A DNA stretch of 64,000 bases from Phallusia mammillata (taxonomy: Eukaryota). Position 1 is the stretch's first letter. Each line of letters opens with the position of its first letter. The position numbers and the translations under genes are program-made. The stretch spans positions 23,436,001 to 23,500,000 of the forward strand of contig OZ281500.1 of the NCBI GenBank assembly GCA_965637545.1, in the 5' to 3' direction. Shown one piece after another: positions 1 to 64,000 of this stretch. The notes below the pieces were generated by a model. It did not search any database, was not told where the DNA came from, and saw only the letters and a list, made by a program, of their open reading frames with translations.

Positions 1-479
1 CAATTATCCAAAAAATTTAAAGAACTTAGCTCAATTAAGTACACATTCTTTGTAAAAAAAAACTTAGTGAGAACATTCGTAATTGAAACTTAAAGCGTAA
101 AGTTGGAATCACCCACTCCGTTGCTTGGCGAATGCAAACTTATGAGCCTTATAGATATGGCTGTAAGTTCAGAAAAAAAGATTTAGTCGTTCATCCTTTA
201 GTTTTAAAGATATATGTATATATTTAGATATATATATATATAAATATCGCTTTTACAGCATCGTCAGTATCTATTGGAAACATTACTGAAAAATGAATAA
301 TTTAACTGGACCAAAAAGTGCTAAAAGTGACACATTTGGTTGTCAAACATTTCGGCAAATCCTTGTTCAAGTTATCAATTCAAGTTACACAGTTTAATGT
401 CAAATTATTGTATGGCATTTTGTCTAATAGGCAGCACGCAAATAACATAAACAGCTTCCTAAAAACAAGTTTTTCGAAC

Positions 480-42400: not shown

Positions 42401-45400
42401 AAAATAAGTTCATTAAAATAATATTTGTGACAAATATTTCAAAAAATATAAATATCAAATAATACTTGATAGCTTTTTTTTAATAAAATATTTTTTTAAA
42501 TAATCTCTACAGTGCCATTTTCGTTTCAAAATTGTACATGCACAATAAAACTTTCAATATCAATTAGGCCTAAGCAAAAATAAAATCCAGCTCTACCGAC
42601 CAGGAATCTCCTTGAACTGCTTGGCGCACTTGTGCAGAACACGGAAGCTGTCATTCACGCTACGCTCCAATTGCTCGGGGTCAATCGAGGTCAGCGGGTC
42701 ATTCATCCATGACTCGTGCCATCTCATCCAATCAGAAGTGGTCGTCCAAAGGTCACGGTAAGGTTGGAAATCTTTCACCAGCTTGTTCAGTTTATCGTAC
42801 TGCATTGCGTCACACACGGACGTGTTACGTCACAATGCCGCGTGTTTGTGACGTCACGATGTTGATGTCATAGATGATGATGGTTAGTTGATGACGAAAT
42901 GAGGTTGATGACGTAAAGATGAAGTTAAGCGTAGCATGAAAAGCAAAAATATATCTAATAGAAATTAACAATATTTTTATGCCAATCGAAAAAACAACAA
43001 CAAAGATTGTTTTGTTGACGAATATCGTTTACGGTTTTCCTGTGAACAAAACACACATATATATTTTTCTCATGTTCTATTGAACCTGTTGTTAAAATAT
43101 AAGAATAAAGCTCTGTGGTCTTGTAGCATAATTGAGGTGAAATCTTTGCTTTAAATCTATGCAAGTTAGAACACTACTGTGCCACACCAACTGTAGTACT
43201 TTTTTTGTCTATTTTGAAGCAACCAGGAAAATGGAAAAGTGAAAAAAATCGTTTACGAGTTAAGCGACTAAACTAAAATCTAGTTGCGTCTATTCTAAAT
43301 TCACTACATGACCTACGATAATGGAACGTGACGTAACGAACGGGCACTGTGACGTCACTGACAATACACAGACGAACAAAGCCGTTTGTTGGAGGCATTA
43401 TCACCCAACAAACGAACCTTGTTTGTCCATAGTAGGAATAAACTGAGCAGCGCTCGAAAAAGATTTGAAGTTAGGGCAGAGCCTAAACCTTATATTTCGA
43501 CCAATGAACGACCAGTAACGTGAAAGGATTAGAAGGGGTTGGAGGAAAGGCCACGTCAACTTAACTTCGTCGGACGATAGAAATGTTAATTTCACCACAA
43601 GGAAAAAAAACGACAGAGGGCGCTATGGTGTCTCACGTAACGTAGGGGCCTTGACCGAATGGTCTGGCGCGCCTGACCCATATATAGACATAAAAAAACC
43701 TGATCGGGATTCGTCCCCGGGAGCGTCCTGGGTTCGAACTCCGTGAAAATAATTCCGATGTTAACTTTAATGAATTAATAAGGCAAATCAATATTCAAGC
43801 ATTTAAACATAATGTACCAAGACATGATGAGTCATAATAAAAGATGACAGTTGTGTGAAATTTACCCAAACTCAAACAAATAAAATTTTAATTAAATCGA
43901 AAATTTACATTCATTTTGAGAGATTAAAAAAATTAGCTAGAATCACAAAATTGGGAGCGACAGAAATCTTACAAGGTTTTGGCAGAGGGGGCAAGAGCTA
44001 CATATACGACAGACTTGCTTTTAATCATTTTAAATCCATCTCCCCGTGTTTGGGCCTAGATTTTATCAGCTTGGTTTGTTTAAAATTAAAACTGAATGAT
44101 AAATTTGTTTGTGTTTTTAACGTGAAGTCAACAAAACCAGATGTTTAGTGTGATTTTTAATCGATTAAAGGATTTCGGTTATCAGTTTAAGGAGCGGAAA
44201 CGGACTGTTTGCAAAAGATAAGACTACGATCATTTGCTTGATAACGCACTCCTTGACTTTCGCAGTAAATATTTTACGAACGTGTTTTGTAGAGGGTAAA
44301 AGTCAACGTTCAAATAGTTTTCCTTTGACGCGGTAGTTTTTAACATTACCAGAGAGCCACATCAAATGTTACGAATTTTTATAGTTTTGCATAAGTATGA
44401 GTAATGTTAAAGTCATGAGGTTTTTAAGATCCCGATAATATTTGAGGACATTAATCAAATCGGATTGTTAACGTTATGGCACATTTGACATTTAAATTTG
44501 ATCTGTTTTCGGCGCAGCTTTGTTTGTTTTTAGTTTGTTAAATTTGACGTGATCTTTCCTCTACCCACGTGACACGGTCATGGTTGAATAACCACATCGT
44601 CGAAAAAATGCCTCAAAACAATGAGAAATAAGAAACAACATTAGAAAGTAATATAACCACAACGTAACTAGATTTCCAACCAGTTTTGGTGATATCAAAT
44701 CACTTGAGAGGTAGGCTCTCAGCTTTGAACAGACAGTGATTTTAGGCACATGTTGACAAATTGTTTGCAAACGGTTTAGAAACTCGTTCATTTTCTTTCA
44801 ACAAATTAAACCCTGCAGTTTTCTGCTTCACAACGTTGTAAGGTTGTGTAGCGATTTTGGTCTTTGAGTTTGGTTTAGTTGCAATCAGGTCAGAAATGTT
44901 TACTATACATGGGAAATAAACTCTGATAAAGATTAGGTTTCATCAAAAAGTTGTCAAATTTTTTTTTGCAGGAACAGAAGTGACAATATTCTGTCTGTAT
45001 TCTACCTGACAATATTCTATTCTATCTGTAAACAACAACAACAAACAGATAATTATGTACTATTTGTGAAAAGTATATCATTAGGATTTTAGAAGACTTT
45101 CTTTAATAATAAATTGGCTGATGTATTTTCATTTGCAAATACTTTAGTTGTAAAACAGGCCCGTATAAGTGCAACGAAGTCCCAAAACTTACGTTAGTAA
45201 CGGGCATCCCAAACAGGCGCTCTCTCTGGTTATAAACTTGTGCGAGTTGTTGACATTCTTTAAGTTGTTTGTTGATGCGCCTCACTTCGTTGGCGACTTC
45301 ATGAGCTTTCAGGATCTCATTGTGAGCAGCGAAACCGGCTACGACCATCTGTGGTAGATAAAATCTGAATTTCTGACACTGGTGATAACAGCGGGTGTTT

Positions 45401-46048: not shown

Positions 46049-46102
46049 CTGCGAGGTAACAAAATTAAGTTAGTTGGAATTTTTTCTTTGGGCACAATTT
46101 AG

Positions 46103-46454
46103 TAGGGATGGGCCAAAACTGCAAGTGTTCTGTTTGGAGCATGCTCGGGTGCATTATGACGTCACAAACATTCCCCATCCCAGCCAGTTTTACAAGTTCG
46201 ATTACGTCACCAAGGTTGCTTACGTCACCAGCGGTGTAATAAGCTGTACAGACCCTAGAAGTATGTGTTTTTTCACAATCATAACGCATTTAAATAAACA
46301 GTCATTATTGTTCTTACCCTTTTATCAAAAGGTTCATATATTAGAATGAATATGCAAATTTAGTGCTCGGGTCAGTTTGTGCAACCGCTCGGCCGAGCAC
46401 CGAGCATCAAAAACAGCAATGCTCGGTACCGGGTTCTGGCTCGGCTCATCCCTA
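46103..46454. mobile_element. hAT Ac-type MITE (352 bp)
   Basis: TIR TAGGGATGGGCC / GGCTCATCCCTA, perfect TSD caatttag, subterminal gctcgg repeats. A relic is at about 16590-16650. Confidence 0.88.
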
Positions 46455-48198
46455 CAATTTAGGAGTATTTAGCACAATTTTGGGTTTATTGAAAATACAA
46501 TACAGTACTTGTTTGTAAACATTTAGGTTTTCTGTGAGAGATGTTCCGTATGGTGCACTTTGCAAATAGAAACTAACTAATACTTTTAATGAACACAACA
46601 ATAATATGGCAAACGGTTTGCCAAAGTAGTATAGTTCATCCCGTAATGATACAATATAATCTAGACCGAGTTATAATCCCTTTTCACATAGGTTTGTAAA
46701 AATCGTTAGAATCTAAACCCTTCATGTTTATTAAAAAATTTAAAAATCTGCTTTTGTGTCGTACCACGCACATGCTGTGTGAATTTTTTTACGTTTTTAT
46801 TTTCTGGTTAATTTTATACAATAAAATTAATTTAACCAAGTCTCAAGGGTTGCGGGATGGTCTAAGTAAAATATATGAATGATATTTATTGGAAGTGGCT
46901 TGTACAAATTTGACAAATGTGCGTGCAAATATTCCACAGAGGTTTGGTGGACACAATGTGACGTAGGTACGAAAAACGTTATTCATAAAGCCTGAGAAAG
47001 CGGTAGAGTGCAAGGAGAACCGTGAGAAATAAGATGCTTCACAAATAAAACTTGTATTAAACATTTACTCGAACATGTAACTAACACTCTGGTGCTAAAA
47101 GTTGCCTTAATATTGAAATATCCCTTCCATGAGACAGCGGTTTAGGGTCATTATATTTTGCCACTGTAGTAGATGCTAGAACAAAACTTTAGATCAATTG
47201 CTGTAGTTTTTTTCTGGTAGTATTTTCGACTCTCAAAAAAATGAATATCTGAGTTTTTCGAGGGCTCCAAGTAAATTTTACTTTGGGGTCTACAGACTGA
47301 CTACGCAAACAGTGTAACTGCTTGGCGAGTTGGAAAATATCAAAACCGCAACTCTGCCACATCTGTGGGATGTTTGGCTTCATTTCCTTGTCAAATGCAC
47401 GTCCTGCGTCCTAATGGAAGCGGTTAGCTTTGAGAGAACTGTTCACGAGAAAGCTTGTTGGCCAGTTGACAAAGATTCGACAGCGTAAGTGACACTTGGT
47501 GCGTGTGTGATAAGGAAGCTGGCACCGTACGTGATTGTTTTCATATATAAGTTGGAGATACAAAAAATACTTTACAGTTTTCCGAAGCGGACAGCTGAAA
47601 GCAGTAAATATGAATTTGTTGTTGTCTGATAACGCACTTTCCTCTAAATATGAGTTTGGAATTTAATTTTATTGGTTATTTAAAACTAACTTTACAACCA
47701 TCTTTTTACAAGCTAAGTTTACAACTCAGATAAATAAAGACAGAGAAAATATAAACTTAAAGTTCTTTCAGCGACAATCAAAGAGTAAAATAGCAGAAAT
47801 TAAAACGTAAATTTGTTTGTGAAAAAAATCTGATAATTTTTTTTGGAGGTAAGTGATCAGCAAACTTTATAACCAGCCAATGTTAGCATGAAGGGAAATC
47901 TTGTAAGATAATAATAGGTATACAGATGATTTACACAGGCTAGGAAGCCTGTGACGTCATAGGAGATTCGCAGACGAACCACTCCCAGTGAAAGGAAGGG
48001 TTCGTTCGTAATTATTTTCGAGGTTTCTTGGCGATTGTACGTTGCTTTCCAAAGATAGATGTGGAGTGGTGATAATAATAATAATGCTCACTGATTACAA
48101 GAGTCTGATAACGGCATGTTTCCTAGGTTGGTCCGTTTTTAGCGTTGTACAAACTGAATCAATAGTGTTGTGCGCAAATTTTGGGATATTTTCTATAT

Positions 48199-48729
48199 CA
48201 GCGCTTCCCAACCGGTGGGCCGCGGCCCACTGGTGGTCCGCGACGTTCTTTTTCGTGGGCCGCGAAGCTTGTCAAACTTCAAAAAGTTACACAGTTCGTG
48301 TGAACGTACTTTCAAGTTTTACTATATTTCTCTAAAATATAATATTAGTTACTATGAAAGTCGCATAAAATTTCACGTTAAACAAAGCTTTATCACACAA
48401 ACAAACTGCAATTGTTACGTCATAACAGCACTTAAACTGCAATTGTCGCATCACAACACTACTTAATCGAAGACACGAAACAGTCTTAACACTGATACAC
48501 TAAATGCTGAATTGCGTGTGAACTTGTCTCCCAATTGAACTCCGACTTGATCTCATCATATAAAATCAGCAAGCTCAGGCTTCAGAAGTATTGCTTGTGC
48601 GGTTATTATTGTTCTTTCTTAATGTTTGTTCTTTTTCATTGTGGTTTTGTCGCAATATTAAACGGTGGTCCACCAAAAAAATTTTTTTTGGGAAGTGGGC
48701 CGTGAGCTGGAAAAGGTTGGGAAGCACTG
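48199..48729. mobile_element. hAT/Charlie MITE (531 bp)
   Basis: TIR CAGCGCTTCCCAACC / GGTTGGGAAGCACTG, perfect TSD ttctatat. Confidence 0.9.
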
Positions 48730-48735
48730 TTCTAT

Positions 48736-48779
48736 ATAATTGTCAGTCTGAGATAATTGTCAGTCTGAGATAATTGTCA
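48736..48779. repeat. 17-bp tandem repeat, about 2.6 copies
   Basis: ataattgtcagtctgag repeated immediately right of the 48199-48729 MITE. Confidence 0.85.
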
Positions 48780-50049
48780 ATTAGCAAAAGTACGTTTCTA
48801 CAAAAATATTACTAATGTGTGTTGCTTAACTGCAGTCTATGTGGCAAGTTTTGACGCCTGTTTGTCCTTCAGTCTGTTTTTATTTTGGTAAGAACGCTAT
48901 AACTTTTTCGTACGAGAACAATTGTACATTTATCAATTAAGATGTATGTTGCTCGTGTAAGCATCGTGCTTCCGTCCATTTATATCAGGAACAGTAAGAC
49001 ACTTTTTTCCGCTTGTCAGACAATATTCCGGGAACTGGTGTAGAATCACAGAATCAGCAAAAAGACATTGATCAGAAAGGGTCTGGGTGGTAAAGGTCTA
49101 TTCGTCAATTCTCCTTGTGCTCAAAATAGAGCATGACTTTCTAACCTGACATATGGTTACATAAGTGGGCGAAAATCTTCTTTGTATTTTCACAAATAGA
49201 TTGCGGAGTACTGATGAACAGCTTAGACGTTTGCAAAGATTTAATCAAGCGTAAAATACGAAGTAAACGTCGTTTCGAATCAAAACAATTCGAATTCCGA
49301 AATCACATTTTCATTAATGTTACTGAATTTTAAAAAGGGAGCGTGAAAATGTTCAAGTGAATGATCTTAGCGATTAGGCATAAAAATTATCTAGAAAAAA
49401 TATGTATTATTTGTATTGGGTAACCGAGTTATGAACTTTGAAGTTAAACAGTTAGTTCCGAATTCACTTTCTTATTGTTACAACAAAGCAAAAACGTAAA
49501 AACATGAAAAGTATTTTCAGAAAGCAATTCCAATTTTCTTAGCTTACGCACTTGAAACGTGGGAAGGAAAAATCAGGATTTTATCTGTTTCTCCTACAAT
49601 TAAGAAAACAACTTTCAAATACTTTCTCCTAGCTTTTTTCCTGTAAGCTTCTAATTCTGGTATGTTAGTGACTCATTTCCTTAAAACGCCGGTGTTATGT
49701 TACCCGGGTGCACATTTCCTTTACGTCAAGATTTAGTTGACGTCAAATTCTCTACGTCAACTGCTAACTGTAAAGTATTCACAAATTTAGAATCATTTGT
49801 TAAAAACTAAGCAGTCACAGAAAACCGAATCTGAAGAACTCTTGCGGGACAAGCGTGCGTTTACGTCTGCTCAAAGTTAAACCTTAGAGAGCTGAATGAA
49901 AGTCATTGCTAATTGATTTCTCAACTGTCAGGTTAAAATCAACCCGAGCAAAAGGAGGTTTTTAAGAAAGAAGCAGTTTGCCAAGAAGAGTAATACAAAC
50001 CATGATTATGTGAGCTTTTTACCAAACAGGATTAGTTTTTAATTTTATG

Positions 50050-50960
50050 CTTTCAAAGAAATTTTAGTTTGCAGCACATTTGTGTAGTTTTTAGTTTCAT
50101 AGAAGGGCACCACTCGACAGTCAATAAGTAATGTTTTTATCCAATTAAAGAGTAAACATAACCACACGTTTAGTGCTTCAATTAAACGTACAATTCAACG
50201 AGTTCAATTCCAATCGTTCCTGCAACAGCCTGATATTATTTTTCTGTCAACAAGATCAGGTTTTTTTTTAAGGTTTGGTTTGGGTGACCGCTAAGTAGTT
50301 TTAAGAGACCGCAAGTGTTTCATTTAAATACCAAAAAATAGCCATATTTGCTTAAACAAAGTATTTATGTCCAAATTTTGGGAAACCGCTGGAGAAATTT
50401 GGGGGACCGTTTCGGTCCCCCAAAACACCTTAAAAAAACACTGAACAAGATAAAGACAGTGCTGTTTGTCGAAACCTTACAAACCAGGAGTTGAAAAACA
50501 CACAGTTTTAGGCATTTCCGCTCAGACATCTTTTTGATAGCTGACAGAAATATTATTGAACCAACAGACGGGGTTGCGGGGTGTAGTCCATTTGATGACA
50601 GAGGCTTCGACTTTCTTGCCGGTGTTTTTTCTATCAATACTATGTTGCTGTTTCTTCCAATTGGTAAAAGGAAAGGCCATGTCTTATTCAAATGGAAAGG
50701 TGATGTTTCTTAATTTCCGGCCCTCAGTCATTTGACAGAATTTTCTTATCAATTGTTCCGCAAAAATTTCAAAACAGAACAAAAAAAAAAACGCTTCAAA
50801 AATATCTTAGGCATATACCATCCATTGCTTATCAATACGACGATGAAAAAATGTTTGAGCAAAATTATAGAGTTGGCTTCTTCTGTGGCCTGAGAGGTGA
50901 CCATGAATGAGCAGATCACCAGTCAATAGGAGTTATTCTGTTTGCTCAATCTCTCAGACG
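50050..50960 (-). pseudogene. Possible decayed hAT transposase relic (TTF-type zinc finger, ZMYM1-like)
   Basis: Colinear broken frames DLLIHG...FAQTFFHRRIDKQWMVYA*..FCFEIF, then PFTNWKK, then W..TR*IVRLIEAL. These resemble the recalled order F...Y.R...WLxYS...FCF, FxNWKK, W..L.RII in such transposases. Many stops and frameshifts; interrupted by the 50257 MITE. Confidence 0.35.
50257..50443 (-). mobile_element. hAT-type MITE, long variant (187 bp), same family as 3902-4044
   Basis: Same TIRs in reverse orientation, perfect 8-bp TSD aacaagat. Confidence 0.9.
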
Positions 50961-53900
50961 TGGAGCCACCGGCAGCCGTTTCCTATCATGCGTAAATCAA
51001 CAATCCAAGTTTGAAGAGCTTTTACCTTGACTGGTGTCGCTGAGAAATTGATGCGGTAACGAACTTCAATGACTTCGCCACGTTTTTGTACACATTTTTG
51101 CGTGGGTTGTTTTGATAACGAATCGTTGGCTTGAGATACTTGAAGGCCACAAACAGTTAAAGTGGAAACGCAATATTTTGTTGAGTTTTGCGGTTTGGTT
51201 TTTCAGGGAAAGGTTTTTGGTGGCCTATACCGACATGTTTGTTGTTAAGATTTTGTGTTTTGATCCCTGATAGTTCACTGGCAATTTTTGCGGCATGCAC
51301 ATGTTTTACAATGAAAACAAAGCATAGCCTGGAAGGCGCGCATTGATAATAAAACTAATTTTCAAGATGTTTAAAGTTTGAAATTGGAACCAAAAACTTT
51401 GATTTAGAATAATACATTTACTAGTTAGAAGTACGCAAAAAGTTGCAAAAGTTGTTTCAGCTTTGTTGACACAACTAGCTGTCGTTGGTAAAATACGAAA
51501 CTTGTGATGTGGTCGACAATAAAAAAGGCGGTGTAGTCTTCTGGTGTATTTTTTAGCAACGAATCAGATGAAAAATGGAAAAATCGTACTAAGCAGTTGA
51601 TTCAAAATCATTACCACAGAAAGCTCACAATTTCGGCTCCGTTGTTGATTTTGACCTGATGTGATAAACGACGTTGATCAATAGTTTAGGGTGGTAAATT
51701 ACAAACGCACACAATCAACCCGCAAGACCTCTTCAGTTTTTTCTCAGTAATACGGTTCACTGCTACAACAAACCGCATTTCAGGAAATCACGTTTAACAA
51801 CAGACTGACAAAATGTGTGTCACCAAACTCCTTGCAACGTTGCTGACAGTTGCAGACTTTTCAACTAGTCTCAGTGCCCAGACTGGTGATACTTAGAAAC
51901 ACTGTTGAAGCGAACTGCAATTTAATGTGTTCACTAATTTTTTTTAACAGTTTTGTTTATAGTTCAGCTGGTTTAGTAAGTTTTTGTCTGGAAGATTTAG
52001 GGATCTATGAAAGATAAAGTGTTTTCGTTTTAGAGAATTTTTTCCTAATAGTTTGTCTAGTTTTGGTTGGAGGGATATTTGTCAGGAAAATCTTTTCAAT
52101 ATTTGACAATTCTTTATCTGATAAGAGATGTCTCATAGGAAATGATTCGACAAGGTATGCGTGTCGTCACTTTTTTGTCCATTTTATTAGCGGTTTTTGA
52201 AGCTCAATTCAAAATATCGTTAACTGTTTGTTTATAGCGTTTGAGAATTTTACCCTTTGAGCAAAATAATGTTTCCGGCGTGTCAATTTAAAAATGTACG
52301 ACGGTATAGGCAATGTTTCATGAAATAACTGTCTTGCACTAAGGATAACAGCAGAGATTGTTGAAATGTCTAAATTGCAAAATATTCAATATAATAAAGA
52401 TTACTGGCAGTAATGTTGTCATTCAAGCTGTTTTACAAATCCACTATTGCCAATTTCGAAAATGTGATTATAGTTTATCATTGGCTCCATACATAAACGA
52501 AAAAATTAGTGGCAGTAATAAGAAACCAGATAAAAATGCAAAAAGGCAAATATAATAAAACAATATAGTTACAAATAATAATAAATTACCAACAAAGAGG
52601 TGACTATTTTTAAGTCATAGTCAAAAGTAATTCTTTTATTTGGATTTGTGTGCGTTTTCACTTCTCTAACGTGGAAAATAAACATTTGTGTGAGCAACCA
52701 TGCACAGCAGATCGAGCACAATTTTCCAACGGTTTCAGATCAGCTATGCAAAGGACGGAGAGACAGAACGTGACTGCGGTTACAAAATTTTCAGGTCCGG
52801 GTTTCTTAGTACAATTGTTGGTTCGACGCGAGACATAGAAGGTTTTTCGTCGAAAAGATAGAGAATGTTTATTCGTCCATGGTCAACTGCGAACTTGGCA
52901 CATTGAAAAGTCGATTTCGAAAGTTCTTTTGTCAACACATAGCACCGTTAGAGAGCTCTTGAAAGGAAAACTGTGTCTGTGTGAAACGTGTTGAAGATAT
53001 TGAGATTAAGAGCTACATAGAAATACGAGGAAAATGATATTCATTGTATTTAGATAAGTCTGTGGTTGGATTCATCTCAAAGGAAAAAAAGCATAAAGTT
53101 ATTTATACTACCTTGGACAAACGCAATAGCCTACTGTACGTAGTGAATATATCCATTGCAAACGTTGCAGAATCAGTGCAATTGCATTATTGCAAGTGTT
53201 GGTATTCCAAAAATAGTGTGTTTGGATGCTTTTACGTTTGGGGTAAACATTTTTTGTCTGGTATGAAAAAAATCAAAAATTTACGCATGTTACCTCATTT
53301 AAACGCATTACTATTGAAGAAGCTGTATATGCAGTAAATACATACCAGTGGAACAGCAAAATCAATGAACTTGAATTATAAAAAAAACTCTTAAAATAAG
53401 AAAACATTGTAAAATGTTGCTTGATAAAAGTTCAATTGCTAGATAACTTGCATGTAGTGAATGCATTTCGTCATAGACAGAGATTTTAAAAACCATTCAA
53501 TGAAAACAGTCAAGCATTAAAAGTTTAAAATTGCAAAAAGTTTTGGCAGGTATCATGCAACGTTATTGTTGTGATAAAACATGGTAAGGCGTTATAATGC
53601 CCCCGAGCAAATTGTTACAATAACAAACCCGATTGAAGCTGCACTATGGCGCTGCAAGTAAACGTTCGATCAAAGATTTTCGCCTTATCTTAAAAACTAC
53701 ATGTGACAAAGAATTCATTATGCGAGAATTTGAAAAAACAGCCGTTTTTGTTTATAAATCGTTCAACAAATTTACGACTTTGATTCCACTTCGAACTGGT
53801 ATGGAGGTTTGGAATAAGGCTACAACCGGGGGAAAACAGCAAACACTGAAACATTCTGGCAAAAAAGAAATATTTATTTAAGCTTTTAACCGGAGAAATT

Positions 53901-54877
53901 GCTATGAGCATAAGTGTGCCGGCTGTTCAATCTGTTTTCTGTGCGAAGTACTTGCAGAAAAAAGTCCCGATTAAATTTGTGTCAGTCAGGAGGACAGTGG
54001 CTATTTGTAGCACTTATTTGGTGGTACACAACAGAAAAACGTCAGATAAGGCTTTAATTGCTGGCGTTAAAGGGCGAAAGTCGTGCATTAACCGACCTTA
54101 AGGTTGACTGTGGCAGAAATAACTTACAGGAGCCTCAAGGCCAGATGTGTTAGAATGAGGAAGTTTAGATTTAGAGCATAATGTTTTCACTGAACACAAA
54201 TATTACATGCGATGGACAGGATAGGTCAGTTAGGCTACTTGAAAACCGCAATAGCACATCTGACTTAGATTAATGTCACAGAACGTATAAGTGAAGTTAA
54301 ACAGAAGATTAAACAACAACGAACAGAAGTATGTACTTTACAATACCTGGAATTGTTTAGAATTGATAATTTAGTATCTTAATCGCAAATCAATACACAG
54401 AATAATAAGCTGTTTAAATTTTTTGTAACAAACATAGATGCCCTTGGTATATCACTTACGAAACGTCGACAGAATACAGCATGTTGTTTTTCACAAATAC
54501 AGGGTCAGTATACATATCTGAGGTGACAAAGTGCTTTGTGCTGGAATATATATTTTGTACAATTATCTCTTCCTAAATATGTTGACAAAGTTCAGTTGAC
54601 AAGTGTTTTCCTGGCAGAAACGTAGTAATTTGGCGTTTATGTGTAATTTAAGACCTTAAAAAGAAAATTCCGAATCGAGAAATCAGAAAAACAACGAGTC
54701 ACACACTTGGGTTGTTTTTCATATAAGTGTTTATAACCGTGTTTTTTTTAATCACAAGTCCAATTTGAACAATAAAACATGTCGCTTTTTACGTATATTT
54801 GGGCCGTTATTTTCATCATTAAGTCCAATTTTATTTCTTCAAAGCAACTAAAAAACTGCTTTTATCTCGACAGTGCA

Positions 54878-54890
54878 TTTTTGCTTGCAG
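54878..54890 (+). promoter_or_regulatory. Strong 3' splice acceptor upstream of the receptor ATG (5'UTR intron or spliced-leader trans-splice site)
   Basis: tttttgcttgcag|G ends at 54890, 41 nt before the ATG of the signal peptide at 54932. Confidence 0.4.
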
Positions 54891-54931
54891 GAGTGTTAGG
54901 CTGTAAGTTTAAGCCTGCCCCAAATGCAAGC

Positions 54932-57900
54932 ATGCGAGGGTTTGTCGCGGTGATCGTGATTATATTTCTGGTTCTGCCGGAATCTACGCATGCCAAAGCA
55001 GGCAAAACTGCCTCGAAGAGTGGCCTCGTCGCTGCGGCAAAGAATGTGAGACAAGGGCAAAGCAGCTCATGTGAGTGAATTGAAACAAAGCAAACCTCCG
55101 TTAATCAGAACCTGATTGTACCAAAAAATTTGTCCGGATTAACTGATGTCGATTAGTTTAAGCCTGACCACTACAAATTATTTGTACCTCGAGTTTTGTC
55201 GGAGTTAGGCGCAAATCCGGATTAACCGATGTCGATTAGTGCAAGCCTTAACACATTACAAATCATTTGTATACCTCGAGTTTAGAGGTTTACTGTGCTT
55301 GGAAAAATATATGTATTGTAAAAATACACAAACAAAAAACAATAGGCCTGACATTAAGTATACTTGTGTTAGGCCCAAGGCTAACACTTAGGAAGTACCT
55401 ACTTAGTTGTAGCGATAACCATTTGTCTGGAGGTCGACATTTACATTTGAAAACAACAACACGAGCAAAAATCGTTTTTGGTTAGCTGAACTTGTCCATA
55501 CAAATGCAAGATTCACGGACCATGTAGAAATTTTAAGGCGAAGCCTATATTTAGTCACCTCATACCAATTTAAACAAAATTTACCTAAAAGCGATTTCCT
55601 ACATCCCCAAATGACAAAGAAACAAAAATATGTTAATATAATGAAGGACGACAATAGTTTTATTTATTCTTATGTTCAGCTCTAAAGGTTAGGCTTCAAC
55701 GCAAATATTACAATTTAAGTTATTTACAAATTTATCTTTTCCAAAAACACCTTAAATAATAAGAGTGTTAAGTTAACAACAGTTCAATATTTTTTAGCTG
55801 GCACTGGAGCAACAGCCGAGAGCAGGTCGACTGGATCTTACAGCAGACGCAACAGAACGAATACACCACTACAACAGTTGAAGGAAGATATTATGGACGG
55901 GTACGATGCAACCATGGCACCAGTCATCCACCATGAACAGAACGTCAACATACGAGTCGGAATTACTTATAGACAGGTCAGACTCAACCCAAGTTTGTGG
56001 TGTTTAAGTGAGTGAATTTAATCATGCAGTATTTAAAAGCTCTTTGTGGGACTGGCGTACTGTGATTTGTATGTAAGTGTGCCATGATAAACGGATCAAA
56101 TATGCCATCGTGTTCAAATTGATGTTATTGATCATTCTCACGGCCTAACAGGCCAGCAAACAGGCACCAATTCATTTAACTGTCACTGTATGAATAAAGC
56201 GCTAAAATTTCAGAGCTGAACAGCTGGGGACGTAATATCTAATAGTGACGTCATTGATTTCTGGGTTGTCACGTGATGTAAGAAAAGGCGTACTAAAGCG
56301 ATTACGCAAACCAGTTTGGTTGTAAAACCCTAACAGACAGAGAGAGTGGTACAAAGAAAATGAGAGCATACGTGACATGTAACTAATATTCAGTTTGCAA
56401 TTTCAGCTACCTGCATTTTAATTCGATTTGCAAACAAAACAAACAAGGCAGAACCGCGTGTTGTGGGTTGTACAAACAAACTGCTACATTTGTGACAACA
56501 GAAAAACGACGAAAACAGGTTGAGATTCGTAAACTGACACCAAGAAAACGGTAACTTTGCCCACGGCGCGGCCAGTTTGGCATCAAAAATGCATGATGAC
56601 ATTAAAAGGTCCAATTTGAAACAGCTTCCTCGCAAAAGGATCAAGTTTTACCACAAAGCGGTGCAAAGCGCTGAATAATTTATCAAAGGGCAACATTAAC
56701 GCGACCCAGTTAGGGTATTTTGAGGTTTTCCAAGCTTGAAAACAACTGAACTTCGCCCTCCACTAAAGATTTACGAACACAAAAGGGGAATTCTATTACA
56801 TAAGTTATGTTGTTACGTCATAAACCCGTCATAAAGGGTGCTTTTCGACATTACAATCCCAGAATTGCGTTGGAATTTGCAAAGTATGATTGACAGCACA
56901 AAGGATGACGTGGCCCACTTTTCCACGAACGCGTTTAAGGCATTTTAATAAGTAGCTGATCTAGACAACTTGCGGTGTAGCTCGGCGCCTTGTTGAGCAG
57001 ACAAGGTAAGGTAGATCAATTTTCTCTTGTGTATTGATAAGCAAGATAATCACTTGCAGTTAATTGAAACCGTTTTCAAGGGGACCTAAGATTATCATCT
57101 CCCGAGTCCGGACAAACAAATTAATATACATAAGAAAACAATGGCAGTTTCGGTATTCATTATGTTGTCGATCTATTTAAAAGAAGTGCCGACAAAAACG
57201 AAATGTTTTATCAAGGCATATTGACTTGCATTTTTATGGTTTATCAAAAGCGGAAAACTGATTGGTTTATTTTGGCAGGTTTTGGATTTGGATGAAAAGA
57301 ACCAAGTGCTGAAGAGTTTGATCTGGTTACGACTTGTCTGGAACGACATCCATTTCATGTGGGATCCAGCTGACTACGCTGGTTTGGACGAACGTAAGTT
57401 TATCAACAAGAAAACCACAAGAGCCATATGTGGGAATGTTTGGTGACCGGCTGATTCGGTGTGGCGCCTTAAAGGGGTCTGGCGTACTATGATTAATAAT
57501 TATATGAGTGTGCCGTGATCGCTGGTCTGCATGGGCGCTTCACAGGGCTGATCCCAGTTATGAATTTAAGTTCCTCTTGGTAAACCTAGAACAGCAAAGG
57601 GACGCCTACACTTCGATGAACGTAAATAGTAAAACGAATTGACAGAAAATTTAATCAAAGTTGCAAAAGTGTGAAAGTGTGAAAGTATTAACCTTTTAAA
57701 TGTTCATAGAAAATGATTTTTGAAAGCATTTTAAATACCGTCTTCCATGTCAACTATAAGGTTCACGCATCTTGCGGTCCAAAATAGTTGCATAATTTTG
57801 GACAGTGATTCTTATGCTATAAACTTAGCAAGCCCAGTGCGTTCTACTAAAAAAAAATCGCATGTCAAACTCTCATCAAATAACGACCGCGTGTCCCGTA

Positions 57901-60900
57901 CATAATCACGTGACAATATTTTCCCGTCTTTTTTATAGTGGAGATTCCCCACTCTTTGGTTTGGATGCCTGACATCGTGGTTTATGAGGAGATTGGGGTT
58001 CGATCCTACGCCCCTCGACTCACACACGTTAAAGTGAGGCACGATGGGACGGTTCAGTACCAGGAACCAACTTCTATTGAGACTTCGTGCAGCATCGATA
58101 CTGCTTACTTCCCATTCGATGTTCAGGTGAGACATAATGGGTTACAATAGGGACTTTTTTTCACATTAATATTTCGTTGTAATGTTTTATTGGGTTTGTT
58201 TTGTATGTTTTTTGTGTTTTTTTGTATTTCCTGCTTCCTTTAAATTTCTTGATAAATGTCTCAGCGCCCCAAAATGTGAACAAAAACCACTGTACGAAAG
58301 TACAAGTATCAAGAAAACCCATGTCTACAAGCTTGAAATCCAATTTGCACTGCTACTATTACAAGCACAGAAAATATCGAAAATTTAACGATTCTAGTTT
58401 CTCGTGCAAACAACCCTGTAATTTTGTTTTTCTTCAAACAAATGATTGGGCTGCGATTTACGATCCAGATGCAATTAAACAGAATATTCGATTAACTGAG
58501 ACGCAATTATTCTCGGGTTCAGATCTGTCGCATGACGTTCGTGTCCTGGTCGCAACCCGTGACCCACGTTGACCTTTCGAGCGACCGGGAGTCATGGAAA
58601 CTGTCACGTGACACAAAGTCGTATTTCATCAACACCGGCGAGTGGAAATTGGCGAAGATCGGCGTCAGGAAAGTGGTGAGATAAGAAACAAAACACTGAT
58701 ACTTTGGTGGCTAAGATGGATACATTCATAACTGGGATCAGACCCGAAGCGTCTATCTATGCAGACCAGCGATAACGGCACACTCATTCATAAATCATAG
58801 TATCCCAGCCCTATTAAAAGCGTATAGCCTGCGGTAGAATTCGAACCCACGACAGGAGTCTTTCCGGAAAATGCGCTCGTAGAGAAGTTTGACAAAAGTT
58901 TTGGGAGTATTAAACTTGGCAAATCTCTATATTTTTCCTTTAAAAAACGATTTTGAATTCGTTGGTTAAGAATCTAATTCATAATGCATTAAGCACTTAC
59001 AAAAATAAACCGCCCACCCAAACCACACACGACCTGCAACTTAATCCTCCAACATCAAAATATCGTCGTAAACTTGTCAACGTGCTCATCCGATTAACCG
59101 AAACATCTTTGCAGGTTCGAGATTACGGAGCGCTGGTGAACCGTAAAGCTAAAACATTGGATGAGCTTCAAGCGACACTCATGAATGGCACCGCCACTGA
59201 AAGGTGAGATGGAAAATGGTGTTGAACCAAAGAGAAACGAGCGCACAATGTTATAAACCGAAACGAAAACAGTATCCAGGGTGCAGACAGGGCACAATAT
59301 TTCTACCTATACTCCCAAAGTCATGTAGCCTATATGGACAATGCCTTGTCACTAGCTGTACTAATCAGACCTTACAAGTCGAAACAGTGTGTACTTCATT
59401 TAATGACTGAATGATTTAATCGGAAAAAAAACGAGAGGAGCACCTTCATGGCTTCAGCTACGATACAACACATTAAGAAATAGGGGGCTTGGTTATACAA
59501 CCACTTAACGAAATTGCCACGTTATACCTTTCCAACATGAATGATAACCAATAGTGTCCACTTTGTCAATGCATTTTTTAATGTACGTATTAAAGTCCAC
59601 ACATCATTCTCTTTCAACAATAATGAAGAGTTTTTTAACACGGTGAACAGATCTTCAATGAGAGTTTCGCGCTTGTCATGCGGCAAGCTATGTTCAAGGA
59701 AAACATAAATGAGTAACACACAAAAAAAGTCTCATTACTTAATTAACATGACCTCTAAGCGTTCGAAAAATACCACAAAAAATGGGCAGAAACGTTTTGG
59801 CCCAAAACTAACTTTGAAAAATCATTTTGGAACACGTACAAAATGTGACGGGTGCTGATCTATACTTAGTCACCACTAAACGTTCGAAAAACCTCCAGAG
59901 GCAATTTTCGCAGGTACATTCTACCCAAAACTGACTTAAAAAGTCTTACGTGTAGTTTGGATCATGTACAACGGGCGGGCGCTCTATGAGGTAGACCTAG
60001 TCTGTATCTTGAGAAGTGGCCAAATATTGAAAACTTAACGATGTTAGGAATATGATATTGATCCGAAACTCGATTAAAAATGCAACCTTGTCCCAATGCC
60101 AACACATTCGACTTTATTAACCTGTCAATCATTTGTAAGGCTGTGATAGCTATAGCAGATATTTGGCGGCGGACAATAAGAATAAACGCGTGCTGCTTTA
60201 CAAATAGACTGACAATGTAGTTTATCACACACACAGAAATTTTTTAGCCTTTAGTCCAAACCGAATCTTGAATTTTTGTGATACAGTAGACCTCGGTTAA
60301 TCCGGACCCGTTTGGATCCAAAAATTTGTCCAGATTGTGCGAAGACCTGGATTAACCGACGTCGGTTAGTTAAAGCTTTACCACATTACAAATCATTTGT
60401 ACCTCAAGTTTTGTCCAAATTAGAGGAAGATCCGCATTAACAGAATCCAGTTTTACCAAGGTTTACTCTATTATAGCTTTTTCGATACATATTGGTGTGT
60501 ATATTCGTTGGCAGTAGACCTTGATCTCAATAACTCAACACTATTTCGTTGTACTTAGTCCGACAAACGCTACAGATAGCCCAGAAGGCACAACAACGCA
60601 ATCTCCTATCACCGTCGGACCGCCAAAAGTTGAAAACATCATGGATTCACCAACACAACAAATAGAGACGATGTTACCTGGGAATCATACAGTCACAGAA
60701 AGCATGTATGCAGAGGTGAGACGGATTCTTCTAGACCCAGTGTGGATTGGGTTTTGTTTGAGTGCAGACAATACTTTTGGTAGCAGGATCGAAAATTTTG
60801 TATTTCAAATTTTCTTTTTTGGTCAAGCATAGAATTGAATTATATTTAAATACGACCGAGTATGCCTATACCGGCGATATATGTGTGTTTTGCAACAAAA

Positions 60901-63620
60901 AGTTTAGGTTGGATAAGCTTTTACCATTATTATTATTTTCCTTGGTAATTTGTTAATTCATCGGAGTGTTAGATAAAGTTTGTTAGTGTAAAGATAAATT
61001 CTATTTTGTCCATGACGAAGAATAGTTGCAAAGTTTTACAATGGAACAAGTCGTGTGTCCTATAAGCTTTCGGGAAGTCACTCTTTTTGTGATGTTACAC
61101 AGAGTTTTAAATGATTTTATGAGAAAACATTCAAATTAAAGTTCGACCTTCACAGGTGATCTTTACACTGGTGGTGAGGAGGAACTCATCTCTCTACATG
61201 CAGAGTATGCTCTTCCCAAGTATCATCCTAACCACTGTTGCTCTTCTCGGCTTCTACCTGCCTCCGGAGTCGGGAGAAAGGATCGGACTCCAGATCACAA
61301 TCCTCCTTACTTTTATGGTAAGCTACTAAAAAAGCTCTTACTTAAATGCTCCTGACCAAAAATGAGGTTTCTCAATACAATTGATGGCAGTTCCAATACG
61401 GACAATGCTTTCAGTACCGTATAACCTAGGGGTTCACGTACCCCGATGAGTAAAAAACATATTCCAAGTGGGGTGCAAAGATGCTTCATCACTTCAGTTA
61501 GAGAATAATAGTTTCGTTCCAGAAAGTACAGAAGAATTGGTATGTTAGTTTTTAGATGCAAAGCATTTGCACTTAATTTGTATTGAGAAAACATTTTAGC
61601 CTTGGTTGGCAAATGCCAAGGGGACAATGTAAATGTAAGCTGTTTTGAAACACTAAACGGACAAGAAAAGTAGCTCAAAAATAAAATTCCCAGAAAACTT
61701 GTGCACATATACATTGTAATGCGGACGTTTCAACAATCGCGTTTATCATGGTCAGTGTAGTGTTGAACTGAACTTATGCACATGGGGAAATTCCACACAA
61801 GTAAAACACGATAAACGGTGTGTCGCAGGTGTTTCTGCTTGCAGTGGGAGAAATGTTTCCCGCTTCAACCGGCCCCTACTTGGGAGTGTATTTCGTCATC
61901 TGCATGGGGTTACTCGGGGTCAACCTGGCTATGACGGTGATGGTGCTGCACATTCACTTTAAACCAGTCGTGAATAAACCCGAAGGAAAACGACAGAAAA
62001 CTTCCCCCAAGAAAACCAGAATGAAAAGGTGCGTAAAAATGAATGGTCGCGTGCGAAAGAATGAAACGGTTTCGCAAACGAGTATTGTGCAGTCAACCGT
62101 AGCAAAACGCATTGCTTTGTGCCAGTTGTCAAGACTAGATGATAAACTTAGGAAATATTTTACAGTCCATACGAAACCATTTTGAGCTCTGGTAATTCTT
62201 TTTTAATGAACTACTTTGAAATGAAGTAACTGTATATTATGAAGAGGCTGGTTGTATAAACTCTCTATTGTTTAAAACCGTATCGAATCTAGGTTTACTC
62301 TAACCCTAATCTAAAATAGATTTGCTTTAGCTGCAATAAATAATTCAAACTAGGGTTCTTAGTTTGGCAACGTTTTAAATTCAACAAGCAAATGTCTCAC
62401 AACAGTTACGCAGTCCAGCAAAAGACCAGTTTTAATTTGACATCTGATAAGAAAAGGAGTTCTTTGGCAAATGCAACTACCTATAGAAAAATACTGCTCT
62501 CAAAAATCTCAATATTTTCCATCAGATGCGCCGTCTCCTGTTGCGACAGCGACTTTAGCGGCGACGACGAAAGCTGCGTAAAAAAAACAAAGCGGAAAAA
62601 ACGGAACGGTTCCGCAATTCCGCGTCATTACCGGAAATTCCTTCAGTTCTGCGATCGATATTGGACACTAGGGGAGCGTGGTTCGCGCTGGATGCAACCT
62701 CTGACTGATGACGAAGACGATTACGACGATGATGACGTCATCTCCGGCTACGAATCGAACTCCAACGAATGCACGTGGTCGGATTCCCGGGAAATCGCGG
62801 GAACGGAGAAAGTCCCGGCGGATTTGCAGAAAAATTCCGAGGAAAAACGGGAAAGGAGTTTTTCCGCGATTCCCGATGTAAAGTTTATCAACGAAACTGG
62901 CAAGGATTCGATTGAAGAGAAACAGAAAAGGTTGGTGACAATTTGCTCCAGTATATAGAAGCACATGCCACCGGGTAAAGTAAAATACAGATTAAAAGAC
63001 GCACTAAAGCAGTTGAGAGCCAAGTCTACATATAAAGGGCAAAAAAGATTAATGCAGACTATGAAGTGAATAAATTGTTAGGTGACCTTTATAAACGCAA
63101 AAGTTTACCAGTCTTTACACTGCAGCTAAGGGAAACCCAAAATATACATAGATAGAACTTCGAATTGACCTTTCAACGCCTGTAAACAGTTGCAATATTT
63201 TATATAATCGTCAGGTGCTCTCATATTTCGTATGATAGACAGACAAAAACGACACATAAAAAGGTTCGCGAAAAAAGGATTCACAGAAAAAAATTAATAT
63301 TAACAATCGATAACTACCAATAGCGTAACTCAAATTTGCTTTATTCCAGCGCAAGCGTAATCAACCTCTCAGCGCCCGAACATTTGGCGGCAAATCACCA
63401 TAACAACGGACTCAACAGGGGAAAATCCACCGGATGTCTAGAAGTGCTCAACCGTGACGCCCGTAATCGGTCAAGCGGATCGATCGTTAGTCTCGCGGCA
63501 GAGAAAAAACAGAACCAGCAAAAGTACGAAAGCAAGAGCGACACCGAGCGATCAAACGTGTTGCGCCATCGAGTGTTGAATTCAATCACTAATATGAAGG
63601 GATTCACCAAAGTCGCTAAG
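54932..63620 (+). CDS. Cys-loop pentameric ligand-gated cation channel subunit (nicotinic acetylcholine receptor alpha7/9/10-like or 5-HT3-like; lacks vicinal Cys), 3' end (M4) off-window
   Basis: Exons 54932-55070, 55798-55976, 57279-57393, 57939-58126, 58523-58675, 59115-59203, 60559-60715, 61156-61317, 61829-62028, 62526-62930 and 63350-63620 are all GT-AG with consistent phases and give 686 codons without a stop. Features: signal peptide MRGFVAVIVIIFLVLPESTHA; LKEDIMDGY helix; DLDEKNQVL..WLRLVWND..F.WDP; loop A WMPDIVVYE; Cys-loop CSIDTAYFPFDVQIC (C-x13-C); loop B FVSWS; GEW; M1 LFPSIILTTVALLGFYLPPESGER; M2 IGLQITILLTFMVFLLAVGEMFP; M3 YFVICMGLLGVNLAMTVMVLHIH; long M3-M4 loop ending FTKVAK at a donor site. 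Confidence 0.92.
55086..55295. mobile_element. pogo/Tigger-like MITE, eroded copy with internal duplication
   Basis: aaacctccgttaatc...ccggattaac(t/c)gatgtcgattag twice...gaggtttactg. Confidence 0.65.
57420..57585 (+). mobile_element. Family T repeat, 3' body and terminus
   Basis: gggaatgtttggtgaccggctgattcggt...gctggtctgcat...gctgatcccagttatgaatttaagttcc. Confidence 0.75.
58712..58880 (-). mobile_element. Family T repeat, internally deleted copy
   Basis: taagatggatacattcataactgggatcagacccgaagcgtc...agcctgcggtagaattcgaacccacgacaggagtctttccgg. Confidence 0.75.
60284..60468. mobile_element. pogo/Tigger-like MITE (TA TSD)
   Basis: ta-CAGTAGACCTCGGTTAATCCGGA...TTACCAAGGTTTACTC-ta. Confidence 0.7.
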
Positions 63621-63694
63621 GTATGTGATGTGAAACTGATACATGTGTGGATTTACATTTGTCATTAGTTTGAAACATTTGACAGATTAAAATG

Positions 63695-63960
63695 ATTGTG
63701 ACGTCAGAATAAAATATTTTATGACGTCATGACGAAATACTCAGGAATAATTGTGACGTCAGATTGGAGTATTTGTGACGTCAAATTGACATGTTTGTAA
63801 AGTCAGAAAGAAATATTTGTGACGCCAGATTGGAATAATTGTGACGTCAGATTGGAGTATTTGTGACGTCAGAATGAAATATTTGCGACCTCAGAATCAA
63901 ATATTTGTGACGTCAGATGAAAATACTTGTGACGTCAGATTGAAATGTTTTGTGACGTTA
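63695..63960. repeat. 22-bp minisatellite (about 11-12 units) built on the TGACGTCA palindrome
   Basis: Unit approximately ttgtgacgtcagattggagtat, with 8 perfect TGACGTCA sites and several degenerate ones. Confidence 0.9.
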
Positions 63961-64000
63961 GACTAAATCCTTGATAAGCTATTGCTGCCAGGCATAATGT

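What the first reader, a model, noticed from the sequence alone, without database searches (positions are those of the whole stretch)
46049..64000. Receptor gene apparently nested antisense in a giant DNAH1 intron
Seen: DNAH1 introns in the window are about 0.2-2.4 kb. The most 5' visible exon (45907-46048, phase-2 acceptor, corresponding to roughly residue 900 of human DNAH1) is preceded by at least 18 kb with no recognisable dynein exon, and an 11+ exon ion-channel gene occupies the opposite strand there. Established from memory: DNAH1 is an inner-arm dynein of motile cilia, and an alpha7-related nAChR mediates ciliary arrest in Ciona gill slits. Inference: a cholinergic-type cation channel embedded in a ciliary motor gene could share a ciliated-cell chromatin domain, or be mutually exclusive with it through transcriptional collision.
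Basis: partly seen in the sequence, partly recalled or inferred. Interest (0 to 1): 0.7.

Follow-up and report, generated by a model that had tools for sequence, protein, structure and literature searches.

The report
Receptor gene nested in dynein intron
A complete, transcribed ion-channel receptor gene lies backwards inside one 19.8-kb intron of the ciliary motor gene DNAH1 in this sea-squirt-like genome, which is a real but ordinary gene-within-a-gene arrangement with no evidence yet that the two genes affect each other.

Summary
The minus-strand gene is a single-copy DNAH1 orthologue. Its exon at 45907-46048 joins, by homology, reading phase and GT..AG ends, to an exon 19,804 nt upstream, 1.85 kb beyond the window's end. 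The other 63 gaps between dynein exon blocks have a median of about 0.5 kb and a maximum of 2.4 kb.

A plus-strand cationic Cys-loop receptor gene lies wholly inside this intron. Its coding sequence runs from 54932 to 64608 in at least 12 exons. It has a Cys-loop, M1-M4 and a PESGER pore motif. Its last three splice junctions appear in RNA-type contigs.

A divergent relative, in which only exons still align, has the same receptor between the same two dynein exons. Two more distant relatives have that intron at only 0.2-0.9 kb with no receptor, so the nesting is probably a lineage-specific gain.

Three things are not shown:
- No RNA read crosses the big intron.
- No functional coupling between the genes was tested.
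- No vicinal loop-C cysteines were found, and the best per-exon matches are alpha9, beta3, alpha4 and 5-HT3A, so an alpha7 link is unsupported.

The scan noted this nesting from the neighbouring window, and other nested genes elsewhere in this genome. Nested genes are common, so interest is low.

The parts
473..46048 (-). Part of the host gene (DNAH1 orthologue) that lies in the window: linker, AAA+ motor and C-terminus, in 56 homology blocks
   Evidence: Colinear tblastn blocks. Pfam DHC_N2 at 38093-42790. The AAA1 exon scores 188 bits to DNAH1 against 97 bits to DNAH6.
45907..46048 (-). Host exon just 3' of the giant intron (142 nt, phase-2 acceptor); corresponds to P0005 residues 916-966
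   Evidence: Single-copy in the genome. 88% amino-acid identity in the close relative.
46049..64000 (-). Giant host intron, 19,804 nt in all. It continues to position 65852 in extended coordinates (G000:C7:23501852).
   Evidence: GT..AG ends on the minus strand, matching phase, and no dynein homology inside.
46101..46455 (.). Interspersed repeat copy inside the intron
   Evidence: Several copies elsewhere in the genome at 79-82% identity.
48199..48734 (.). Interspersed repeat of about 535 bp, with copies up to 99% identical elsewhere in the genome
   Evidence: more than 30 scored copies, with 4405 first-look candidates for the 8.85-kb query as a whole.
54932..55045 (+). Receptor exon 1: ATG and signal peptide (predicted)
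   Evidence: Open frame, GT donor, in phase with exon 2. No RNA or homology support.
55878..55976 (+). Receptor exon 2 (start of the ligand-binding domain)
   Evidence: Pfam LBD positions 6-37, weak. AG/GT ends. 38% match in the relative.
57279..57393 (+). Receptor exon 3 (LBD, W-x-D...W motif region)
   Evidence: Pfam LBD positions 39-78. AG/GT ends. 58.5% identity in the relative.
57939..58126 (+). Receptor exon 4 (LBD, WxPD motif and first Cys of the Cys-loop)
   Evidence: Pfam LBD positions 76-138, E 1.3e-14. PDB matches alpha9, beta3, alpha4 and 5-HT3A.
58523..58675 (+). Receptor exon 5 (second Cys of the C-x13-C loop, loop B FVSW, GEW strand)
   Evidence: Boundaries and frame. Matches the canonical exon of paralogue L022.
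58676..61155 (+). Stretch holding the loop-C exons. One ends ...TESMYAE|GT near 60715. The exon boundaries were not resolved here.
   Evidence: Open segment 60518-60829 and donor sequence. Phase arithmetic requires one further exon.
61156..61317 (+). Receptor exon with pre-M1, M1 and M2 (PESGER pore entrance)
   Evidence: Pfam Neur_chan_memb positions 2-38. Best PDB match 5-HT3A. AG/GT ends.
61829..62028 (+). Receptor exon with the end of M2 and M3
   Evidence: Pfam Neur_chan_memb positions 40-129. The donor at 62028 is seen in RNA-type contigs of 3 runs.
62526..62930 (+). Receptor exon, intracellular loop part 1
   Evidence: Both junctions are seen in contigs of 3-4 runs. The frame stays open.
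63350..63620 (+). Receptor exon, intracellular loop part 2. The last exon (M4, stop at 64606-64608) lies at 64369-64608, beyond the window.
   Evidence: Junctions 62930>63350 and 63620>64369 are seen in contigs. The M4 exon matches Pfam memb positions 175-231.

Best explanation
This is an ordinary host/nested gene pair. The single DNAH1 (inner-arm axonemal dynein heavy chain) gene runs on the minus strand from about 75 kb (extended coordinates) down to position 473. One of its roughly 65 introns, after the codon for about residue 915, has grown to 19.8 kb. That intron contains a complete, intron-bearing, independently transcribed gene for a cationic Cys-loop (nAChR/5-HT3-type) receptor subunit on the opposite strand, together with interspersed repeats.

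The receptor belongs to a small family of three genes, with two paralogues on contig C1. Because it has at least 11 introns, it probably entered the intron by a DNA-level duplication or transposition rather than by retroposition. This would have happened in an ancestor shared with one divergent relative. More distant relatives keep the same intron at 0.2-0.9 kb with no gene in it.

Shown here:
- the anatomy of both genes;
- that the flanking host exons are single-copy;
- transcription and splicing of the receptor's 3' half;
- conservation of the nesting in the close relative, and its absence in distant ones.

Inferred only:
- that the host is spliced across the nested gene;
- that the arrangement is a gain;
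- that the two genes are regulated independently.
For: Colinear homology places the intron between two in-phase exons with GT..AG ends. Both flanking exons occur only once in the 240-Mb genome. The extended sequence has no N.

The host is DNAH1 on both sides of the intron. The receptor has Pfam LBD and TM hits, a C-x13-C loop, PESGER and M4. Exons 1-5 and the M1-to-stop exons each read open; the loop-C exons between them were not resolved.

RNA-type contigs show three plus-strand GT..AG junctions of the receptor and pieces running to about 64896. That is 0.95 kb short of the host exon. Host tail exons are also transcribed, with a minus-strand junction 67865>67319.

In the close relative, receptor exons 2-4 lie antisense 4.7-9.2 kb upstream of the downstream host exon, on one contig. 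The receptor M4 exon lies antisense 2.4 kb past the upstream host exon, on another contig. That copy is closest to the nested copy here, not to the C1 paralogues. Only exons align at the DNA level.

More distant relatives have this intron at 817 and 919 nt and at 204 nt, with no receptor.
Against: No read or contig joins 65853 to 46048. No listed contig piece or depth bin covered the exon at 65853-66058 in the four runs laid.

The runs are only guessed to be RNA, and they are contigs rather than raw reads. The relative's two contigs do not overlap, so its nesting is pieced together from two halves. The species of all the relatives are unknown, because they come from metagenome contigs.

The receptor's exon 1 and its loop-C exons are predictions only. 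Independent regulation of the two genes is assumed, not tested.
Confidence: 0.9

Rival explanations
1. Functional coupling by co-expression. The receptor shares the chromatin domain of DNAH1, is switched on with it in multiciliated cells, and acts there as a ciliary-arrest channel.
For: The nesting is kept in a relative so diverged that its introns no longer align. Contigs of both genes occur in run X1. An alpha7-related nAChR mediates ciliary arrest in Ciona gill slits, according to Jokura 2020 as cited in PMC13596531.
Against: Once a gene sits in an intron, its position is hard to lose, so conservation of the nesting is expected without any function. The receptor has no alpha-type loop-C Cys-Cys that I could find and is not closest to alpha7. 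It evolves much faster than its host: 58-61% against 88-94% amino-acid identity. The tissue of X1 is unknown, and depth from contigs cannot rank genes. More distant relatives run DNAH1 without the receptor.
Confidence: 0.08
2. Transcriptional interference. Antisense passage of polymerase along the 19.8-kb intron makes expression of the two genes mutually exclusive in a cell, or alters host isoforms.
For: The geometry allows it: the nested gene is antisense and fills half of the intron. Host/nested crosstalk is described in mammals (PMC11694760) and interference by nested genes in PMC3192792 (title and abstract).
Against: Nothing here measures it. Both transcripts are present in at least one library. 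Nested pairs are common, and many show no such effect.
Confidence: 0.12
3. Artefact or split gene. The tail exons (65.8-75 kb) and the motor exons (up to 46048) are not one transcription unit, either through misassembly or because the dynein gene has broken into two genes with the receptor simply lying between them.
For: No RNA junction across the intron was seen. An unspliced reading stops at once after the donor (AAG TGA).
Against: The sequence is gap-free. Independent metagenome assemblies of a relative link each host exon to the matching end of the receptor. The exon phases match and the splice signals are canonical. Both halves are single-copy and under strong constraint at 88-94% identity. 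A motor with no tail, or a tail with no motor, would not make a working inner-arm dynein (established knowledge).
Confidence: 0.03

Closest known systems
Host/nested gene pairs of animal genomes (mammalian catalogue PMC11694760; Drosophila tim2/2mit PMC3786989; LRRTM genes in alpha-catenin introns PMC3933685)
   Same: A whole protein-coding gene sits inside one long intron of another gene, here in the opposite orientation. The host intron is far longer than its neighbours. The arrangement is kept in a related species.
   Different: This particular pair (DNAH1 and a Cys-loop receptor) did not turn up in the three literature searches I ran. It is absent from the more distant relatives examined. 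No expression interplay was measured here.
DNAH1 (inner-arm axonemal dynein heavy chain 1; PDB 8J07 g6, 9FQR X1, 9D2F U)
   Same: It is the best match both in the AAA1 exon (188 bits against 97 for DNAH6) and in the tail exon beyond the receptor (DNAH1 residues 775-843). DHC_N2 is present. No DHC_N1 hit was found.
   Different: The full protein was not assembled or searched as one piece. The intron at about residue 915 is shared with the relatives examined but is absent in the genome that encodes P0005.
Cationic pentameric ligand-gated channels (nicotinic acetylcholine and 5-HT3 receptors)
   Same: Ligand-binding and transmembrane Pfam domains, a C-x13-C Cys-loop, a loop-B Trp (FVSW), a PESGER ring at the mouth of M2, a long M3-M4 loop and M4.
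   Different: No loop-C vicinal cysteines were found, so it is not an alpha-type subunit. There are extra Ser/Thr/Pro-rich exons before strand beta-10. The ligand is unknown. It evolves fast, at 58-61% identity to the relative's copy.

Membership tests
Host/nested gene pair | The whole nested transcription unit lies inside a single intron of the host | tested here: met
   The coding sequence runs 54932-64608 and RNA-type contigs end near 64896. The intron spans 46049-65852. The 5' end of the receptor transcript was not mapped, but 8.9 kb of intron lies upstream of the ATG.
Host/nested gene pair | The host exons on either side are spliced to each other in mature mRNA | tested here: inconclusive
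This is supported by colinear homology, matching phase and GT..AG ends, but no contig covered the junction.
Host/nested gene pair | Both genes are real and intact rather than pseudogenes | tested here: met
   For the receptor, exons 1-5 and M1-to-stop each read open and the 3' half is spliced in RNA-type contigs. For the host, there are 65 colinear blocks, and neighbouring exons are 88-94% conserved in the relative. The loop-C exons of the receptor were not resolved.
DNAH1 orthologue | Closest to DNAH1 among all dynein heavy chains, in both the motor and the tail | tested here: met
   188 bits to DNAH1; 136 to Chlamydomonas DHC2; 97 to DNAH6; only DNAH1 chains, E 1e-15.
DNAH1 orthologue | Single-headed inner-arm dynein located in the axoneme | not testable with these tools
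   Needs proteomics or cryo-electron tomography of cilia.
Cys-loop (pentameric ligand-gated) receptor | Neur_chan_LBD plus Neur_chan_memb domains, a 13-residue Cys-loop and four membrane helices | tested here: met
   the loop reads SCSIDTAYFPFDVQIC, M1-M3 are present, and M4 lies on the last exon.
Cys-loop (pentameric ligand-gated) receptor | Cation selectivity signature (Glu at -1' before M2) | tested here: met
   PESGERIGLQITILL aligns to PNSGERVSFKITLLL of 5-HT3A. Actual selectivity was not measured.
alpha7-type (alpha) nicotinic receptor subunit | Vicinal Cys-Cys in loop C | tested here: not met
   The open plus-strand segments of at least 28 aa between exon 5 and the M1 exon contain no CC in a loop-C context. 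The exon that ends ...TESMYAE has no Cys at all. Caveat: the loop-C exon boundaries are not confirmed by RNA.
alpha7-type (alpha) nicotinic receptor subunit | Closest to alpha7/alpha8 among solved receptors | tested here: not met
   For the LBD exon, alpha9 scores 47.5, beta3 44.9, alpha4 44.7, 5-HT3A 43.5 and alpha7 33.9 bits. For the M1-M2 exon, 5-HT3A scores 45.5 and alpha7 36.8 bits. This is a per-exon comparison only; no tree was built.

The most novel reading that the evidence does not exclude
The nested, fast-evolving Cys-loop receptor was captured by the DNAH1 intron. It has since been kept there because it is transcribed from within the ciliary-motor gene's active chromatin in multiciliated (gill-slit) cells. 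This would give those cells a lineage-specific channel that stops or tunes ciliary beating, so that the motor and its brake are one regulatory unit.
Probability: 0.07. Interest if true: 0.5.

Novelty: new member of a known kind. Interest (0 to 1): 0.22.

Why it matters
For annotation, it shows that the DNAH1 gene of this genome is complete and spans about 75 kb. Gene finders must not cut it in two at the receptor, and the receptor is a separate antisense gene.

For evolution, it is a dated example of a multi-exon gene being gained by a formerly short intron. The intron is 0.2-0.9 kb in more distant relatives and 15-20 kb in two species. It adds to several nested pairs already noted in this genome.

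If the two genes were shown to be co-expressed or mutually exclusive in ciliated cells, the pair would be a compact system for studying host/nested crosstalk in a chordate with small introns. Nothing here shows that yet.

Tried and rejected
- **Pfam DHC_N1 search of the genome.** It found no hit near the locus. This does not mean the tail is absent: homology to DNAH1-like proteins found it.
- **Word search with the two flanking exon peptides, looking for transcript-derived fragments that cross the junction.** All hits were ORFs on genomic contigs that stop at or read into the intron. They proved useful for synteny instead.
- **Read laying on 62001-68000.** No listed contig piece or depth bin covered the host exon at 65853-66058, so the big-intron junction stays unseen.
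- **Exon 5 of the receptor.** My first guess, 58402-58494, was wrong. Comparison with paralogue L022 showed the canonical exon at 58523-58675.
- **P0005's own genome (GCA_001642005.1).** It has no intron at this position, so it is uninformative about nesting.
- **tRNA and Rfam scans of the intron.** They found nothing. Rfam also found no hammerhead in the foldback.
- **Joined models.** Exons were concatenated only inside a script to check frames.
- One script printed a long, useless translation because a motif was not found. Nothing was taken from it except the exon ends, which were re-derived.

Full report
**Location and material.** The window is G000:C7:23436001-23500000. I fetched the next 80 kb and joined it to the window. 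The resulting 144 kb has no N. Coordinates above 64000 are these extended coordinates (window numbering continued).

**The host gene.** Long minus-strand ORFs carry classic dynein motifs, and Pfam DHC_N2 lies at 38093-42790.
- A library-wide HMMER search with one AAA1 exon returned dynein heavy chains. I mapped ten of them back by tblastn.
- They give 65 colinear minus-strand blocks from 473 to 74543. The gaps between blocks have a median of 503 nt. The four largest ordinary gaps are 1816, 1874, 1951 and 2369 nt, and one gap is 19,801 nt.
- The best reference, P0005, aligns residues 916-966 to 46050-45898 and residues 848-916 to 66058-65852, with no residues missing.
- On the minus strand the upstream exon ends ...GAC TTC AAC GCA AA|GTGAGT. 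The downstream exon starts after ...CCTCGCAG| at 46048. Both are phase 2, and the joined reading [15 protein letters not shown] matches P0005 DDFNAR-WTTIGWPNK.
- The intron is 46049-65852, 19,804 nt.
- Against solved structures, the AAA1 exon scores 188 bits to DNAH1 and 97 to DNAH6. The tail exon at 66542-66781 hits only DNAH1, at residues 775-843.
- Each of the two flanking exon peptides occurs once in the 240-Mb genome.

**The nested gene.** Plus-strand exons give Pfam Neur_chan_LBD and Neur_chan_memb hits. They match nicotinic and 5-HT3 receptor chains.
- With canonical AG/GT ends, the exons are 54932-55045, 55878-55976, 57279-57393, 57939-58126 and 58523-58675. Together they read open for 223 residues: a signal peptide, a Cys-loop SCSIDTAYFPFDVQIC, and a loop-B FVSW.
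- Exons 61156-61317, 61829-62028, 62526-62930, 63350-63620 and 64369-64608 read open for 425 residues to the stop. They cover M1, M2 with PESGER, M3, a long loop and M4.
- One or two loop-C exons between 58676 and 61155 were not resolved. One of them ends ...TESMYAE near 60715.
- No vicinal Cys-Cys in a loop-C context was found, so the subunit is not alpha-type. Per exon it is no closer to alpha7 than to alpha9, beta3, alpha4 or 5-HT3A.
- Two paralogues lie on contig C1, at 58-60% identity in exon 4 and about 80% in M1-M2.

**RNA evidence.** Four runs guessed to be RNA, kept as Logan contigs and coming from two studies, were laid on 62001-68000.
- They show plus-strand GT..AG junctions 62028>62526 (3 runs), 62930>63350 (4 runs) and 63620>64369 (2 runs). 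All three keep the frame.
- Contig pieces run to about 64896, which is 0.95 kb short of the host exon.
- Host tail exons are also present in run X1: a piece at 66563-66768 and a minus-strand junction 67865>67319.
- No listed contig piece or depth bin covered 65853-66058, so splicing across the big intron was not seen directly.

**The rest of the intron.** The 8.9 kb between the host exon and the receptor ATG holds interspersed repeats, including a 535-bp element with 99%-identical copies elsewhere. It has no tRNA and no Rfam family.

**Relatives.** Word searches with the two flanking exon peptides found ORFs on metagenome and other contigs, and I fetched those contigs.
- *Close relative (host exons 88-94% identical).* One set of contigs carries the upstream host exon, with the receptor's M4 exon antisense 2.4 kb beyond it. 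Another set carries the downstream host exon, with receptor exons 2, 3 and 4 antisense 4.7-9.2 kb before it. The two sets do not overlap, so the intron there is longer than 15 kb.
- That receptor copy is closer to the nested copy here than to the C1 paralogues: exon 3 is 58.5% against 46.5% and 42.5%, and M4 is 61% against 29%.
- Only exons align at the DNA level, at 70-80%, so the two species are well diverged.
- *More distant relative (66-81% identical).* The same intron is 817 or 919 nt on two long contigs, with no receptor exon within 10 kb.
- *Still more distant (50-63% identical, a Tara scaffold).* The intron there is 204 nt.
- The genome that encodes P0005 has no intron at this position.
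- The simplest reading is that a short ancestral intron gained the receptor gene in the lineage leading to this species and its close relative. Because the gene has at least 11 introns, this was not a retroposition.

**Interpretation.** This is a genuine host/nested gene pair. Such pairs are common. According to PMC11694760, 17% of human and 12% of mouse genes host a nested gene, mostly in long introns. Other notes of this scan report nested genes elsewhere in this genome; I did not check them. One of those notes calls the genome Phallusia mammillata or a close relative, which I also did not test.

Nothing ties this receptor to that one, and no data here bear on chromatin sharing or polymerase collision.

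**Limits.**
- The runs are contigs of guessed RNA type, from unknown tissue.
- The relatives are unnamed.
- The receptor's exon 1 and loop-C exons are predictions.

Noticed in passing
L010:2001-2266 (extended coordinates 64001-64266, in the receptor's last intron): A near-perfect foldback: two 128-nt arms, 99% complementary, 10 nt apart. Short contig pieces from all four RNA-type runs pile up here at high depth, with loose ends, so it is a copy of a widely transcribed repeat. Rfam gives no hammerhead match even at E<=1, only sub-threshold hairpin (miRNA-like) matches.
   Followed up: partly
window 48199-48734: A repeat of about 535 bp with copies 94-99% identical on several contigs, so it is probably a recently active non-autonomous element.
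   Followed up: no
L010:3401-3600 and 4801-5000 (extended coordinates 65401-65600 and 66801-67000): Two short stretches (contig pieces of about 50-60 nt) inside host introns have very high summed contig depth in all four runs, with loose ends on both sides. This is typical of a small repeat embedded in many transcripts.
   Followed up: no
window 54932-64000 compared with L018 and L016: The nested receptor evolves far faster than its host. Receptor exons are 38-61% identical to the relative's copy, while the neighbouring dynein exons are 88-94% identical.
   Followed up: partly
window 61156-61317 compared with L022:6422-6963: The nested copy has pre-M1 through M2 on one exon, whereas the C1 paralogue splits it after ...SSLYMQ. 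An intron was therefore lost or gained between the paralogues.
   Followed up: no
L013:15246-16220: On one of the distant relative's two long contigs, the last 29 codons of a dynein exon (the one matching window 42605-42799) recur four more times at 156-nt spacing. This tandem duplication is absent from the sister contig L012.
   Followed up: no
P0005 residues ~1441-1878 (L011:23300-29600): The public gene model used as reference carries about 440 residues with no counterpart in this dynein, and it lacks the exon matching window 37241-37435. It looks like a mispredicted or chimeric stretch in that annotation.
   Followed up: no
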